Assembly (NCBI GenBank): GCA_000708835.1 | Contig: DF236980.1 | Location: forward strand, 225,999 to 289,998 | Length of the DNA stretch: 64,000 nt | Reading direction: 5' to 3' | From: Klebsormidium nitens | Taxonomy: Eukaryota; Plantae; Klebsormidiophyceae | Shown here: one piece after another, positions 8,281 through 14,246 of the stretch | Layout of the letters: each line of letters starts with the position of its first letter | How positions within the stretch are numbered: position 1 is the first letter of the stretch | Notes under the pieces: model-generated | What the model was told of the DNA's origin: nothing | The model's database searches: none | Seen by the model: the letters and a program-made list of their open reading frames with translations, nothing else | Position numbers and translations under genes: made by a program

Positions 8281-9564
8281 GGTCCCTTTCAGATCCTGTT
8301 GGATGCGCTCGTTTGACAATTTGACCAAACTATGCAGCAGGCCCGGCCTTCCCACATGGACGACTATACGCGGGCTACGATAGATCAAGCGATAACAACG
8401 GCTGTAAGATGTGATCAGCAGAATGATCTTGAATTGCGAGAGCGGTCTTGGGCTTGCGAGTGCAGGACCCATGGGCATGACACGACGGTGCAGGCAGGCC
8501 AGTCCGAAATTGAATCGTGAATACTTGGGCGCACGTGCTGGCGGCATTGTCGACTCACAGTCTAGCAGCGTATCAACTGAGGATTGGAATCTGGATAGTA
8601 TCGCGGTATGTTCAGCTCTCTAAATTAGAACATGATCATGCGTACACATGCATAATTGTTGCCAAGGCCGGGCCGCGGACGGCAGAGCTGCATATATGCT
8701 TACCGGGTACGTACCGCAAACGTTGTGAGCTAGGCGTTCGATCTGATGACTAGGCAAAAATGATTGCATGCGAGTCCGTGGCAGCTGCATGTACCAGGTG
8801 TACATATGCATGTTCAAGCATGCTATTCTCCATGAACCCTTGGATCCCACAAGTGCTGTATGAAAACCTGCATGCGGGCTTGAACGACAGGTAGCAAACC
8901 GGCTATGAGTGAACTGAAACTGAAGCTGGGCAATGCCACCATCAGAGTTAGTGACGACAAGTGTCAAAGTTGCAGCAGACATGTTAGTCTTGGCCATGAG
9001 CAATCTGCACCACAATGAGCCTTGCAGCGAGCCTGCAACAGTCCAGCCTCGTTGTTCGGCATTCTAGGTTCGTCACTGCGTTTAATGGTCTACTGAGATC
9101 CATCGCTGGCTTTGCTGTCATTGCTGTCTCAAGCTAGTCGTCTTCTTAGCTTTTGATCGCACATGCATCCCCAGAAAGCGCAACTCAAACGAGCGTGGTC
9201 GTTGAAACATCGACCCAAGAAAGGTAGAGTAACCATCTTCGGAAAACTTGTCCATTTTGTACAAGTTCTTCCTTAGGTAATCAAGTGCAATGCGGGAACC
9301 TTGACCGGAGGAACCACGCAGACACATTAGAGCACCTAGCAGAAGTCAGCAGCGGGGCCAACTCTGACCGGAGGAGGGAATCCCGCTACTTGTCTCTGAT
9401 CTCAGTGTAGGAACTTTCAGTGCTCTCCTTTCCAGTAGCCAACGTCTCAAGCTGTATGGGCTAGACACCCGAGAAAACCTCCACAAATTCCAACTTTAAG
9501 ACCCTCGAGTCACTCAGACCTGACTGGGACTGACGACTTCGCCTTGGGAATATCTATTATATAC

Positions 9565-12500
9565 TCAGAGCAGCAACTTCTTGCTGCGGACAATATCCAG
9601 AATCTCGATAATGTCTTCTATAGACTGAGACCCGTCAGCCGGGGGGAGCGCTTCGTACGGTACGCGCAGCTGCTTAGGGATGCGAGAAAGGAACCACTCG
9701 TGCTTCCTAACGTCAGCAATGGAGGCGCGCTGCTTGGGAGAGATGGACTTAGTCAGAAAAGAGGGGAGAGAGGGGGAAGAGGCAAGAGAGATAGACGGGA
9801 CAGGGGTAAGACAGCAGAGGAGGTAGAGAGGAGGGGAAAGGTCAGGATGGAAAGAAAGGCAGGGGCTGAGAACCATGAAAAGAAGACGGAGGAAGGGAGA
9901 GGGGACCGAAAATGGACTGACCTCTTCGGGTTTGACTTTGAAAAGCCTGCTCAGGAGGTCTTTGCACGGCTCAGAAAGCGAGATGCCCTCAGGAATGGTG
10001 TAATCTGCGTTGATGATCCGCTGTAACAAGAAGAATTGGTGCAGCTCAGACAATGAGGCAAGCACAGACTGCATTCCCTAGAGAACATGAGAGAATCCTT
10101 TATTCATCAGAACGAGAGCGCTGAGCCAGAATGCATTCGACAACGTGGACCGAGACCCAAGTCCTGCAGTGTGTGCCAAGAAGTGTGGTCAAACACTTGC
10201 GACTTGAACAAAACTTAAGGACGCTTTGATGTGACCACAGTTACTTTAACGGTCCCGATCGCAAAGAAGCCCTGAAAAATAAAAATGCCATCTGTAGTAA
10301 CTCAAACTATGCCCGTAATGTACCTTGAACGTCCTGTCCACGTTCTTCGGCTCCTCAGGGTCCGAAAATGGGTACGCGTGGAACAGAAGCGCGGCCAGAA
10401 TGACACCAAGCGACCAAAGATCTGCAGTTTGCGCAGCCGCCTGCCAAGAGAGCAGAGTCGATACTGACTCAGGCAAACTTTTGTGATGTGACAAGCGGTT
10501 GAATACTGATCTCTCTAACGGGTCCTCTTCGTCCTGATCATAAGGAAACACTCGTGCGTGAAAACGGGATTCCAACTGTCTGCAAATCTTGTTGCCACCC
10601 AAGCTCAATCAGTAAATGGTTCCGGATTGCATTTCCCAAACCAGCTATCATTGGTGCGCGGAACAGAAGGCTTTCATTCTTGAGTGGCAAGACGTGGAAA
10701 GGCTGCCTTGTCAACCCCAAACTCTAGGTCTTCAAGACAACTTTCTTGATCTGCAAACTTGTCTGCGACCTTGCAATGCTTAAGCAAAGTTGTCAAGAGC
10801 GGTAAGCAAAATTGTCAAGAGCGGAAGGATGATTGCGCCGCCTGAATGCAGCTTCCAAAAGTGACAAAGATGAGATCTTCTTGAGGATGATATTGTCAAA
10901 GTCTTGATTGCGCTCCCTAGGCACAGTCTTCAGAAAGAGCAGAACACGTGCGGGAACATGCAGCGCCTGATCTTCAGCGTGCATGTTACCTCAGAGACGC
11001 GAGGCCGTTGCCACACGATCCCTGTGCAGCAGCGCCTGGCTGTGCCTGACTCTCTTGGTCACACACGGCCCTGCAAGAGGGAGGGTCGTTGGGCACCTCT
11101 TCAGTCTCAGGAGCCAAGCTCTTTGTAAGAATCAGGCTTTGTGCAGCCTGCCTGCTGGCACAGGGAGTGTAGTCTTCTCAATGTGCTTGCGCACCAGCTC
11201 ACCTTCAGATTGAATGGCCTAAACGCTGTGGGACTCTGACTGCGAATGAGGACCTCTGGTGCAGCATACACAGTGATCCCTGGGCCGTGCTCGTCTTGTA
11301 AGGAATCAACAATCTGCAAATGCAGCACCGCAGCACTTGAAAACTTGCATCAAACAGACACGGAGGACAAAGGGTGTGACCCTTCTTTCAACAACCTCTT
11401 AACGCTCTGTGGGACTTCATGCAGGGCAAATCTACAAAAGCATGCAGTTTCATTTGCATCCAAAGACGATCGTCGTATCCTGCTAGAAGTCTTGCAGACG
11501 GACACAAAAAACATAACTCGCGAGCGTTCTTGCATAAGATGGAAAACTATGCCCACATTCTGCATTGTTGGGAGAGGCACTTGACCAAAATGCGTACCGC
11601 TGTGAAGCCGAAATCCGTCAGTTTCAGCTCCGGGAACGACTGACCCCCCACAAGGATCGAATCCAAAGAAAGGCTCCGCGGCAGGGCGCCCTGTCATGAA
11701 CCGCATCAAAAATGTCAATGCAGGGTACTTGAATGATTCAGGAGGTTAGCTTAATACCTCCGGTACATGCGTGACCGCATTTTCGCAAGAAATACAGAGA
11801 ACAGCTGAGCAGGGCATCGAAGAGATCTGTCAGGCATCAAGTGCAGCCACGATCCCTCACCTGTCTGTGGCAGAACTCAAGAGCAGCTACAAGCTGCTGG
11901 AAGAGGAAGCGGACCTGTGGAACAGAAGCACAGCCTGTCTGAACACTTCGCAATGAACAAAGGACGAAAGAGCTTTCCTGTTCCACCTTTTGAAAACAGA
12001 TGTTGCAAAACACTACTGATTGGCCAAGTCTGAACATGAATTGGAAGGCAAAGTCAGAATCGTACCTGGACTTCAGACAGTAACTTCCTGTCCACAAAGC
12101 GCATCAGGCTGCCTCCTGGCACGTAGTCAAGGACTAGAGCCAGATAAAACTGCGTCAAGAGAACCTGAAAAGCGCAAAGAGGGTAGCTCAGTTACTGGAA
12201 GTTGAAGGCCTCACCCTTGAGAACCCAACGCAAATAGAAGAAGCATTGACTATTCTCCATCTCTTGCAGACCTTGCAGAATACGTACAAGCCTCCCAGCA
12301 TGAGGTGAAAGAGGTCAAGGACTGCCAACCGGAAGGCCTTGGAAGACACCCCTCAACAGAGCTGCCTCACCCTTCGTAGCTGAACCACACAAGGATGACG
12401 AAGCATGTGGTAATGTCGAATCTCACGTTCAACCTGCTCAGTAACCTGATGCAAGGAGTTGCGGCTTTGTCAGCAGCTAAGTGGCAGACTCTTATGGTAG

Positions 12501-12959
12501 GATTTGATGAGAGACCTGCGGGATCCAATGATTGACAACAGAGCAAATTCTGGGTCACGTGCAAGCAGCATAGCAACGCTTTCCCACATCGATGGAAACG
12601 AAGAGCGGTTCCAACTTGTCGAATTGGACCTGCAACAATGTCAAAGCTCCAGCCAGCCCCTAGGGCCCGCTCCTGTAGTAAATATCCAGAGGACCAGCTC
12701 CCCAGAAACGAATCCGCTTGGACCCACGAAGCCAAGCGAACAACCAGGTGCACCAGCAACCTGCACGTATTGTAGTTAACCAGTATCGATAGCCATATGC
12801 TAATATTACCTTGCTTCTTTGCAACAGTTTCACTGCAACTTTCTCTCCCGTCTTCCGATCTGACATAACCTTGACTTTTCCAAACGCCCCATGTAGAGCC
12901 CCCAGATGCTCGTCGACATAGTGATCTTCCAGTTCTGCATGTTGTATCGGACTGGCCAT
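9565..12959 (-). CDS. SnRK2: SnRK2-derived kinase-like protein, predicted pseudokinase; exons 12959-12810, 12445-12371, 12164-12066, 11914-11861, 11690-11598, 11313-11203, 10440-10324, 10020-9922, 9729-9565
   Basis: Nine exons of 150/75/99/54/93/111/117/99/165 nt; the canonical plant SnRK2 internal pattern is 75/102/54/93/93/105/99. Motifs: VAVK, EREIRHYHMLRHP, RFLFQQL, LKLTDFG, YAAPE, ADLWSLGV, YPFSDPEEPKN and an SnRK2-box-like SQSIEDIIEIL. The catalytic loop reads GALPRSLSLDS. Confidence 0.85.
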
Positions 12960-14246
12960 AATTGCTTTCAAATCTTCGAAGTCTTAGATGCCGGCCATGA
13001 TGCAAACCAAGGCATTCCATACAACCAGATTCGGCTTGTTCCTCTGAACCACGATACTCTGCAATGTATCCATCTTGGGAGTGTGCTGCAAGCCCCGTGT
13101 GGACGAACAGTAAGTCACAACTCCATGTGTCCTTCTCTTGGAGTCCCGTAAAGCATACTCGTTCTGACCCCGACTCAGAGACCCGACACCCGTCGCAGAA
13201 CATACAGCACCAAACAGTCGACAATCCGGAGTGTAGGCGTGCAACTTTTGTTGGCGTGGCGAAACAGGGTTGCTGAGGAAGGCACTCCCTTCTCCTTGCA
13301 AGTCCTTCTCTTCTTCCTCCGCAGAGAGCTAGAGAAGATGGTGTCTTTCTCTGAAGACGAGTTGCAGGATCCCTCGCAATGGTGACGATCTTCTTTCGTG
13401 AGCTGATCGCCCGGAGGTACGTTACCCCCCATAGCAGATCTGAGCCGTCCGATATTCTTTATGGGACGGTTGAGATGGTGAGAAACAGAATCCAATCAAC
13501 ATTCTCCTGCGTGGCAGCTTGGTCGCGAACCTCTCGCAAACCCCGCGGACGGGCAGCGGTGCAGATACAACTTGCCGCGGCCGCGTAAACGTCACGGTAC
13601 GTCGGATCGACTCTGCCACAGCGGAACAGCGCATTGAACTTGACTCTTAACGTTCAATGATAGAGGGGGACAAGAGATTGATAAGAGATTCCCACGTACT
13701 GGGCCTGGCCTCGTTCCCGAGTAACCGTCATTCTTCCTGTCAAATGCTACAAACGCGAAGCAGCCTACGGGGGTGACGCTACGACCTGTGCCGGATGCGA
13801 GCTGCCCAGCTCATTGAATAGTGTCACTCTCGCAAAGCTCTCCAACAGTTCAACAGCCCTACTCCGCCCGCCAACACGTAGTCTGCTCGCGGCGCCTGTT
13901 CGCAGTCTGCTGGTGATCGCAAACAATAGGCGAGACCGAGCAGACGCTTGGTTCCTTCATTCTCCTTGCTCTTCCACATGGACTGAGAGGAGACCGGTCT
14001 GCTCCGACTCATCACTGTTCCTTGCGCCGGCCACACCTCATCAGGTGCAAAACCCTTCCGCATCAGAGGAGAGACCCGTCACCGGCCCCTGTCAGGTACC
14101 GTTAGCACCCGTAAGTACTCGAGCCACAATATGAGTGTTGGCCTTATAACTTGTTGGCACTAGTCAGAAGCCGGTATTAGCCAGGCCACATCACTGCATT
14201 ATTTCACATCCGACCTGGTTTCGATACAAGTACAAGGGCTCGATAG

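What the first reader, a model, noticed from the sequence alone, without database searches (positions are those of the whole stretch)
9565..12959. SnRK2-architecture pseudokinase with a destroyed catalytic loop
Seen: the exon pattern matches plant SnRK2, but HRDLKLEN is replaced by PRSLSLDS, losing the catalytic Asp, Lys and Asn. The Gly loop is altered (LGALHGAFG). The activation segment is DFGFTAIVDSLQDEHGPGITVYAAPE, lacking STVGTPAY. The VAVK Lys, the alphaC Glu, DFG, APE and an SnRK2-box-like helix are retained. The acidic ABA box is absent because the stop follows the SnRK2 box. The nine-exon frame is intact. Known: SnRK2s are the core osmotic/ABA kinases, and the ABA box binds PP2Cs. Inference: a catalytically dead SnRK2 paralogue acting as a scaffold or decoy in algal stress signalling.
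Basis: partly seen in the sequence, partly recalled or inferred. Interest (0 to 1): 0.75.

Follow-up and report, generated by a model that had tools for sequence, protein, structure and literature searches.

The report
Conserved dead SnRK2-like kinase in Klebsormidium
This green alga makes, correctly splices and strongly conserves a stress-kinase look-alike that has lost the residues needed for catalysis; it is labelled "SnRK2.6" in public databases and probably works by binding partners rather than phosphorylating them.

Summary
Window 9565-12959 (minus strand) holds a nine-exon, all-phase-0, GT..AG gene for a 320-aa protein. It is identical to GenBank GAQ79487.1, "SNF1-related protein kinase 2.6 [Klebsormidium nitens]".

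- **Lost:** the catalytic loop reads PRSLSLDS instead of HRDLKLEN; activation-loop sites S171 and S175 and the acidic ABA box are absent.
- **Kept:** VAVK Lys, alphaC Glu, DFG, APE and an SnRK2-box helix.
- **Expression:** RNA-derived contigs from four studies show all eight splice junctions exactly as modelled. No alternative HRD exon exists.
- **Selection:** two orthologues keep the same nine exons and the same dead loop. dN/dS is 0.017 and 0.05, while introns are only 64% identical. The dead-cleft exons 4-6 are the most constrained.
- **Family:** SnRK2.6, SAPK10 and SnRK2.3 are the best sequence and fold matches. All eight intron positions match a Selaginella SnRK2.
- **Clade:** the gene groups with two other Klebsormidium lineages that carry different catalytic lesions. 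This long-branched clade sits on the SnRK2 side of the tree, outside the canonical core.

It is therefore a real, selected SnRK2-derived pseudokinase. The scaffold/decoy role is inference. I found no paper describing it. An earlier scan note on other DNA of this genome flagged the paralogue.

The parts
12810..12959 (-). Exon 1: start codon, altered Gly loop GALHGAFG (12879-12902), VAVK with the beta3 Lys (12828-12839)
   Evidence: junction seen in RNA contigs
12371..12445 (-). Exon 2 (75 nt): alphaC helix with the conserved Glu (VEREI)
12066..12164 (-). Exon 3 (99 nt): beta4-beta5, hinge, alphaD
11861..11914 (-). Exon 4 (54 nt): alphaE helix (RFLFQQLVAALEFCH)
11598..11690 (-). Exon 5 (93 nt): degenerate catalytic loop PRSLSLDS (11658-11681) and retained DFG (11607-11615)
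   Evidence: both junctions in RNA contigs of 4 runs; conserved in L001 and L002
11203..11313 (-). Exon 6 (111 nt): activation segment lacking S171/S175 equivalents, APE retained, 6-residue insertion
   Evidence: no kinase match for this exon alone
10324..10440 (-). Exon 7 (117 nt): alphaF helix and SnRK2-type DPEEPKN motif
   Evidence: best PDB hits SnRK2.6, SAPK10, SnRK2.3
9922..10020 (-). Exon 8 (99 nt): alphaG-alphaH region
9565..9729 (-). Exon 9: alphaI, linker, SnRK2-box-like helix (9586-9627), stop TGA (9565-9567); no ABA box
12446..12809 (-). Intron 1, partly retained in RNA (retention gives an early stop)
10441..11202 (-). Intron 6, partly retained in RNA (retention gives an early stop)
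9730..9921 (-). Intron 8, partly retained in RNA; in frame and stop-free here, but not a multiple of 3 in orthologues

Best explanation
**Shown.** The locus is an expressed, correctly spliced Klebsormidium nitens gene (GAQ79487.1). It encodes a complete kinase fold of SnRK2 type that has lost the catalytic Asp, Lys and Asn of the HRDxKxxN loop, both regulatory activation-loop serines and the acidic C-terminal ABA box. It keeps the beta3 Lys, the alphaC Glu, the DFG Asp, APE and the SnRK2-box helix. These lesions are fixed and the gene is under strong purifying selection, strongest over the dead cleft and activation segment. It belongs to a Klebsormidium clade of three lineages (A = this gene, B = a paralogue annotated in K. 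nitens, C = known only from a metagenome and fragments), each with a different set of catalytic lesions.

**Inferred.** The protein cannot transfer phosphate, may still bind nucleotide, and acts through protein-protein contacts. My preferred mechanism is that it docks onto the canonical KnSnRK2 and/or its regulators (clade-A PP2C, B-type RAF/ARK) as an allosteric partner or scaffold, tuning the ABA-independent osmotic and desiccation pathway. I consider this more likely than a simple PP2C sink or a RAF substrate decoy.

**Odds.** About 0.9 that it is a selected, non-catalytic SnRK2-type protein. About 0.4 for the specific partner/scaffold mechanism.
For: - Gene model and motifs.
- Identity to GAQ79487.1 and to K. 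nitens DNA.
- All eight junctions in spliced contigs from four studies. An intronless 1476-nt contig encodes the full orthologue (P0169, identical to my L002 model).
- Orthologues L001 and L002 keep nine exons, the same stop and PRSLSLD(S/T).
- dN/dS is 0.017 (dS 0.32) and 0.051 (dS 0.92), with introns 64% identical. Exons 4-6 give omega 0.015-0.02.
- Pkinase scores 158.8 bits.
- Against the PDB, SnRK2.6 scores 204 bits, AMPK 138 and CIPK23 114.
- The AF2 model has pLDDT 88 and pTM 0.89 with a C-terminal helix at 303-318. The top 13 Foldseek hits are all SnRK2 structures, over 305-316 columns.
- 8/8 phase-0 intron positions are shared with Selaginella SnRK2, against 2 of 5 for a chlorophyte SnRK2.
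- The clade profile scores canonical SnRK2 at about 125-167 bits and other CAMKs at 97 or less.
- The A+B+C clade has 100/99 support and sits on the SnRK2 side of 14 outgroups (90/75).
- The B lineage is also constrained (omega 0.05-0.07).
Against: - No biochemical data exist. Inactivity is inferred from sequence, and a few kinases lacking canonical residues (WNK, CASK, haspin) are active.
- No partner has been shown.
- Sequence trees put the clade outside the canonical SnRK2 core on long branches. In the first tree it sat beside an outgroup. Nesting with streptophyte SnRK2s is not rejected, but it is not supported either (p-AU 0.10).
- Exon 1 alone matches AMPK/Snf1 better than SnRK2.
- The runs are only guessed to be RNA; the spliced joints are what argue for RNA.
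- The fold was predicted for the 92%-identical orthologue P0169, not for the window protein itself.
- Packing of the C-terminal helix on alphaC could not be inspected.
Confidence: 0.6

Rival explanations
1. It is an atypical but active kinase that uses non-canonical catalytic residues, as WNK, CASK or haspin do. The strong constraint on the cleft would then reflect catalysis.
For: The beta3 Lys, alphaC Glu and DFG Asp are retained. The cleft and activation-segment exons are the most constrained part of the gene (omega 0.015-0.02).
Against: The catalytic Asp, the loop Lys and the metal-binding Asn are all replaced by Ser at once. The Gly loop carries a 2-residue insertion, and both activating phosphosites are gone. 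Sister lineages B and C carry different lesions (VAAR/PLG; GRD/DPA/no Gly loop), as expected once catalysis is dispensable.
Confidence: 0.07
2. It is a separate, ancient CAMKL family (a sister of SnRK2, or closer to SnRK1/AMPK) that only resembles SnRK2, and is not a derivative of an SnRK2 gene.
For: Trees place the clade outside the canonical chlorophyte+streptophyte SnRK2 core. Exon 1 matches AMPK/Snf1 best. The SnRK1 and SnRK3 intron maps were not tested.
Against: 8/8 phase-0 intron positions and 4 of 7 internal exon lengths are identical to land-plant SnRK2 (PMC9849630). An SnRK2-box helix sits at the right place. SnRK2 is the best hit by about 65 bits in sequence and fills the top 13 in fold. 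The clade profile prefers SnRK2 over other CAMKs by 30-70 bits. All 14 non-SnRK2 outgroups fall on the other side of the tree (90/75). The AU test does not reject monophyly with SnRK2.
Confidence: 0.15
3. It is a decaying or neutrally evolving pseudogene, or the dead loop is an artefact of a wrong exon 5.
For: None was found beyond the loss of catalytic residues.
Against: The frame is intact with GT..AG sites in three taxa. dN/dS is 0.02-0.05, while introns have diverged to 64% identity. Exon 5 junctions are seen in RNA contigs from four studies and in a full-length spliced contig of the orthologue. There is no hidden HRD exon.
Confidence: 0.02
4. It is a decoy in the narrow sense. It would soak up clade-A PP2C phosphatases or B-type RAF kinases by mimicking an SnRK2 substrate or partner.
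For: The SnRK2 fold, cleft and C-lobe are kept and highly constrained. From established knowledge of the SnRK2.6-HAB1 complex (entry 3UJG appears among the hits), PP2Cs dock into the SnRK2 catalytic cleft.
Against: The ABA box, which stabilises PP2C binding, is absent. S171 and S175, the sites that RAF kinases target and PP2Cs dephosphorylate in SnRK2.6, are replaced by Leu and His/Gln.
Confidence: 0.15

Closest known systems
SnRK2.6/OST1, SAPK10, SnRK2.3 (canonical plant SnRK2 kinases; PDB 3UC4, 3ZUT, 3UDB, 3UJG, 5WAX, 3UC3)
   Same: They are the best sequence match (204 bits) and the best fold match (top 13 hits). They share the nine-exon, eight phase-0-intron gene structure, the DPEEPKN motif and the SnRK2-box helix after the kinase domain.
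   Different: The catalytic Asp, Lys and Asn are lost. S171 and S175 are lost. The Gly loop has a 2-residue insertion. There is a 6-residue insertion after APE. There is no acidic ABA box or domain II. The gene lies outside the canonical core in trees.
Canonical K. nitens SnRK2 (KnSnRK2/KnOST1; listed as Kfl00097_0360)
   Same: Same organism and same family in the broad sense. It is the most obvious candidate partner.
   Different: KnSnRK2 complements moss snrk2 mutants (PMC6340887), and KnOST1 activates AtSLAC1 (PMC4594257), so it is catalytically active. The window gene lies on DF236980.1 and appears to be a different gene, but this rests on accession numbering only.
K. nitens paralogue, lineage B (P0048, scaffold DF237731.1; earlier scan note s1-299529)
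   Same: It belongs to the same clade (100/99). It shares the short tail with an SnRK2-box-like helix and no ABA box, the WSLGVILAA alphaF signature, and purifying selection.
   Different: Its lesions differ: VAAR (beta3 Lys to Arg), GRDLNMET and PLG in place of DFG, with an intact GxGxxG loop. Only one intron is left, 5 nt from the intron-3 position.
Tribbles (TRIB1/2), CAMK-group pseudokinase scaffolds of animals
   Same: They are CAMK-derived pseudokinases with a degraded catalytic cleft that act by binding. They appear as weak hits to exon 7 and to the clade profile.
   Different: They are a different lineage found in animals, with a COP1-binding C-terminal tail and no SnRK2 box. The resemblance is functional analogy only.
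Pseudokinase partners of active kinases (STRADalpha-LKB1, KSR-RAF, HER3-EGFR)
   Same: They are the model for the proposed mechanism: a dead paralogue with an intact fold that allosterically regulates an active relative. This rests on established knowledge and was not tested here.
   Different: No heterodimer has been shown for this protein, and the families are unrelated.

Membership tests
SnRK2 kinase family | Kinase domain most similar to SnRK2 among CAMKL kinases | tested here: met
   SnRK2.6 scores 204 bits, AMPK 138, Snf1 120 and CIPK23 114. The Foldseek top 13 are all SnRK2 structures. The clade profile scores SnRK2 at about 125-167 bits and other CAMKs at 97 or less.
SnRK2 kinase family | Nine exons and eight phase-0 introns, with conserved internal exon lengths | tested here: met
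   Window exons 2-8 are 75/99/54/93/111/117/99. Selaginella has 75/102/54/93/93/105/99. 8/8 intron positions are shared, 6 in identical alignment columns and 2 beside indels (PMC9849630).
SnRK2 kinase family | SnRK2 box (domain I helix) directly after the kinase domain | tested here: met
   QSIEDIIEIL aligns with QSIEEIMQII of SnRK2.6. A helix is predicted at 303-318. Packing on alphaC was not inspected.
SnRK2 kinase family | Acidic C-terminal domain II (ABA box or acidic patch) | tested here: not met
   The stop comes 12 codons after the box core, and no acidic tail is present. No downstream splice was seen in RNA contigs.
SnRK2 kinase family | Catalytic loop HRDLKLEN with catalytic Asp, Lys and Asn | tested here: not met
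   PRSLSLDS in K. nitens and L001, PRSLSLDT in L002.
SnRK2 kinase family | Activation-loop phosphosites equivalent to S171 and S175 of SnRK2.6 | tested here: not met
   They are replaced by Leu and His/Gln in the pairwise alignment with SnRK2.6.
SnRK2 kinase family | Monophyly with canonical SnRK2s | tested here: inconclusive
   The clade is on the SnRK2 side of 14 outgroups (90/75) but outside the canonical core (86/87) on long branches. AU tests reject neither placement (p 0.10 and 0.37).
Pseudokinase (operational class) | Intact protein-kinase fold | tested here: met
   Pkinase scores 158.8 bits over profile positions 4-263 of 263. The AF2 model has pLDDT 88 and pTM 0.89.
Pseudokinase (operational class) | Loss of at least one of: beta3 Lys, HRD Asp, DFG Asp | tested here: met
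   The HRD Asp is replaced by Ser. The loop Lys and Asn are also lost.
Pseudokinase (operational class) | Maintained by selection, not a decaying pseudogene | tested here: met
   dN/dS is 0.017-0.051, and introns are 64% identical.
Pseudokinase (operational class) | No phosphotransfer activity | not testable with these tools
   This needs a kinase assay with recombinant protein.

The most novel reading that the evidence does not exclude
Klebsormidium, which has SnRK2, PP2C and RAF but no PYL ABA receptor, may control its canonical SnRK2 through a dedicated set of dead SnRK2-like partners (lineages A, B, C). These would bind the active kinase or its PP2C/RAF regulators allosterically. That would be a pseudokinase-based, hormone-independent control layer of the desiccation pathway, present in an alga whose lineage branched off before ABA receptors arose.
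Probability: 0.2. Interest if true: 0.8.

Novelty: new variant of a known kind. Interest (0 to 1): 0.55.

Why it matters
SnRK2 kinases are the hub of osmotic and ABA signalling, and Klebsormidium is a reference alga for how that pathway looked before land plants. The papers I read treat K. nitens as having one SnRK2 (one gene in the table of PMC4594257; "the SnRK2" in PMC6340887). GenBank meanwhile calls this dead protein "SnRK2.6", which can mislead gene counts, orthology calls and antibody or co-IP interpretation. A strongly conserved, expressed clade of three SnRK2-like proteins with different catalytic lesions points to a non-catalytic function tied to this pathway. That is directly testable by binding and activity assays. 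I found no SnRK2-family pseudokinase described in the searchable literature.

Tried and rejected
- **Wrong inference, later corrected.** From I inferred that the gene was missing from public protein sets. One search shows that GAQ79487.1 is identical to the model; it was hidden inside a 90% cluster represented by P0169.
- **Exon-by-exon Pfam** gave only sub-threshold Pkinase hits.
- **The first tree**, with two outgroups, placed the clade beside an outgroup under a long-branch warning. I superseded it with a 14-outgroup tree.
- **Alignments A1 and A2** misplaced short exon rows and were discarded. Only the clean A3 alignment was searched. One search failed on a frame slip, and I dropped that row.
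- **L005** held only the last two exons of a land-plant SnRK2, so I used Selaginella (L007) for the intron map.
- **P0002** was a bacterial repeat protein that matched only the translated intron.
- **In-frame intron 8** as an alternative coding isoform is rejected. Its length is not a multiple of 3 in L001 or L002.
- **Joined step.** I never typed the joined spliced model into any search, fold or look-up tool. It was assembled only inside local scripts from window.fa. Searches were made exon by exon by reference, and later with the stored full-length proteins P0169 and P0283. The full-length searches (PDB, Pfam, fold) used P0169, the 92%-identical orthologue, and were not repeated with P0283.
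- **Operator limits.** Read laying received 4,501 letters.
Full report
**What is there.** On the minus strand between 9565 and 12959 lies a nine-exon gene whose exons are all phase 0 and whose eight introns all have GT..AG borders. It encodes 320 residues.
- Gly loop GALHGAFG, with two extra residues relative to GSGNFG
- VAVK
- the alphaC Glu in VEREI
- catalytic loop PRSLSLDS in place of HRDLKLEN
- DFG
- an activation segment ending in APE
- an SnRK2-type DPEEPKN motif
- a C-terminal QSIEDIIEIL helix, followed after a few residues by the stop

No acidic tail is encoded.

The spliced product is identical to GenBank GAQ79487.1 (UniRef A0A1Y1HSF7), named "SNF1-related protein kinase 2.6 [Klebsormidium nitens]". 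The 3395-nt gene is identical to scaffold DF236980.1 of assembly GCA_000708835.1. The organism is therefore K. nitens, and the public gene model agrees with mine.

I laid contigs of four runs from four studies on 9000-13500. Every one of the eight predicted introns appears as a CT..AC joint on the plus strand at exactly the predicted coordinates, including 11313|11598 and 11690|11861, which flank exon 5. The runs are only "guessed" to be RNA, but spliced joints beside near-empty introns 2-4 argue for RNA rather than DNA. No other joints were reported. No HRD-like motif occurs in any frame of either strand across the gene. A sister species also supplies a single intronless 1476-nt contig (L011) whose 320-aa ORF (P0169) is identical to the nine-exon model I had derived independently from that species' genomic contig L002.

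**Is it under selection?** Two orthologous genomic loci were recovered: L001 (a Logan contig) and L002 (a JGI metagenome). Both keep all nine exons at identical lengths, GT..AG sites, the same stop, and the dead loop (PRSLSLDS and PRSLSLDT).

| Comparison | dN/dS (Nei-Gojobori) | dS |
|---|---|---|
| window vs L001 | 0.017 | 0.32 |
| window vs L002 | 0.051 | 0.92 |
| L001 vs L002 | 0.043 | 1.10 |

Differences fall overwhelmingly at third codon positions, while introns between the window and L001 are only 64% identical. Split by region, exons 4-6 (alphaE, the dead catalytic loop, DFG and the activation segment) are the most constrained part, with omega 0.015-0.02. The gene is not decaying. The degenerate cleft itself is being preserved.

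**What family?**
- *Sequence.* The full-length orthologue P0169, 92% identical to the window protein, scores 158.8 bits on Pfam Pkinase. Its best PDB matches are SnRK2.6 (204 bits), SAPK10 (203) and SnRK2.3 (187). AMPK follows at 138, Snf1 at 120 and CIPK23 at 114. The alignment runs into the SnRK2 box.
- *Fold.* An AlphaFold2 model (pLDDT 88, pTM 0.89) shows a complete kinase fold, a disordered activation loop and a C-terminal helix at 303-318. Its 13 best Foldseek matches are all SnRK2 structures, aligned over 305-316 columns.
- *Single exons.* Exon 7 and exons 8-9 match SnRK2 best. Exon 1 matches AMPK/Snf1 best. Exon 6 matches no kinase.
- *Gene structure.* This is the strongest independent evidence. 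A Selaginella SnRK2 gene that I mapped has exons of 198/75/102/54/93/93/105/99/264 nt, all phase 0, matching the published land-plant pattern (PMC9849630). All eight of its intron positions coincide with those of the window gene. Six fall in identical alignment columns and two sit beside loop indels. A chlorophyte (Coccomyxa) SnRK2 gene shares only two positions.

**A clade of three.** The searches uncovered two further lineages.
- *Lineage B* is P0048, an annotated K. nitens protein on DF237731.1 (the gene of earlier scan note s1-299529), with an orthologue P0025/L009. It has an intact GxGxxG loop but VAAR, GRDLNMET and PLG instead of DFG. Its gene keeps a single intron, 5 nt from the intron-3 position. 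Its omega is 0.05-0.07 with dS saturated.
- *Lineage C* (L004, from the same metagenome as L002, plus fragments P0004, P0182, P0185, P0191 and P0192) has no Gly loop, GRDLKLEN and DPA instead of DFG, and has lost introns 6 and 8.

A, B and C form one clade with 100/99 support. All three lack an ABA box, and all share the WSLGVILAA alphaF signature. Different lesions in each lineage are what one expects if catalysis became dispensable at or before the base of the clade. In the databases searched, only Klebsormidium-type sequences belong to it.

**Where does the clade sit?**
- With only two outgroups, it was drawn beside an outgroup under a long-branch warning.
- With 14 non-SnRK2 CAMK outgroups, all outgroups fall on one side (90/75). 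The clade sits on the SnRK2 side, outside the canonical chlorophyte+streptophyte core (86/87), next to a few other divergent algal SnRK2-like proteins.
- AU tests reject neither a grouping with streptophyte SnRK2s (p 0.10) nor monophyly of the clade plus all SnRK2s (p 0.37).
- A profile of the clade scores canonical SnRK2s at about 125-167 bits and other CAMKs at 97 or less.

I therefore call the gene SnRK2-derived or SnRK2-sister. I do not file it as a canonical SnRK2, because three defining features are tested and not met: the catalytic loop, the activation-loop serines and the acidic C-terminal domain.

**How it most likely works.** The shown facts are a preserved SnRK2-type fold, loss of the catalytic Asp, Lys and Asn, retention of the beta3 Lys, alphaC Glu and DFG Asp, loss of S171 and S175 (aligned to Leu and His/Gln), no ABA box, expression, and very strong constraint centred on the cleft. 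From these I infer a protein that does not transfer phosphate, may still bind nucleotide, and works by binding. The missing ABA box and missing serines argue against a plain PP2C sink or a RAF-substrate decoy. I favour an allosteric partner or scaffold for the canonical KnSnRK2 or its regulators, by analogy with STRAD-LKB1 or KSR-RAF. This is inference, and I put it at about 0.4. An atypical active kinase remains possible at about 0.07.

**Known or new?** The gene model is public but carries a name that implies an active OST1-type kinase. The papers I read treat K. nitens as having one SnRK2: Kfl00097_0360 in PMC4594257, and the functional KnSnRK2 in PMC6340887. That gene appears to be a different one, judging only by scaffold accession numbering. 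Searches for SnRK2 plus pseudokinase, Klebsormidium plus pseudokinase, and both accessions found no description of this protein or its clade. Pseudokinases are common, so this is a new variant of a known kind. Its interest comes from its position next to a central stress pathway in a key algal model.

**Limits.**
- I could not retrieve the canonical K. nitens SnRK2 sequence or any SnRK1 or SnRK3 gene structure.
- Contigs cannot give expression levels or strand.
- The fold and full-length searches used the 92%-identical orthologue.
- I never typed the joined model into any tool. Joins were made only in local scripts, and searches were made by reference.

Noticed in passing
window 12446-12809, 10441-11202, 9730-9921: Introns 1, 6 and 8 are covered by exon-spanning unspliced contigs at depths comparable with the spliced forms in all four runs. 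Introns 2-4 are essentially empty, and introns 5 and 7 are very low. This points to selective intron retention. Retaining intron 1 or 6 gives an early stop, while intron 8 is in frame here but not in the orthologues. These three introns are also the best conserved against L001 (64-72% identity, against 54-64% for the others).
   Followed up: partly
L006 4001-6133 (K. nitens DF237731.1): The paralogue, lineage B (P0048), has only two exons and has lost seven of the eight SnRK2-type introns. Its single intron lies 5 nt 3' of the intron-3 position. Its lesions (VAAR, GRDLNMET, PLG) differ from those of the window gene.
   Followed up: partly
L004 261-6291 (JGI metagenome 3300060285): This is a third lineage (C) of the clade. 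It has no Gly loop, keeps VAVK, has GRDLKLEN and DPA for DFG, and has a short tail. Introns 6 and 8 are lost. Fragments from other samples also exist (P0182, P0185, P0191, P0192). Whether K. nitens itself has this gene is unknown.
   Followed up: partly
window 12810-12959: Exon 1 (the N-lobe) alone matches AMPK/Snf1 better than SnRK2 in the PDB (24.6 bits; SnRK2 is not among the 60 hits shown), because of the GAFGKVKV...KVAVKLL pattern. This may be an ancestral CAMKL feature or convergence.
   Followed up: no
window 9565-12959 (GAQ79487.1): The public product name 'SNF1-related protein kinase 2.6' implies an active OST1 orthologue. The sequence lacks the catalytic loop, the activating serines and the ABA box.
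   Followed up: yes
L012 (K. nitens DF236980.1 225563-248957): Annotated neighbours of the gene are an Alg14-domain gene, a 665-aa protein without a Pfam hit, a Methyltransf_16 gene and a DUF3082 gene. There is no obvious functional link.
   Followed up: no
proteins P0175, P0176, P0183, P0184: Other divergent algal SnRK2-like proteins branch near the base of the SnRK2 side of the tree, outside the canonical core. P0175 keeps HRD, and P0184 has NRDIKLEN. Algal SnRK2-like diversity seems wider than the canonical family.
   Followed up: no
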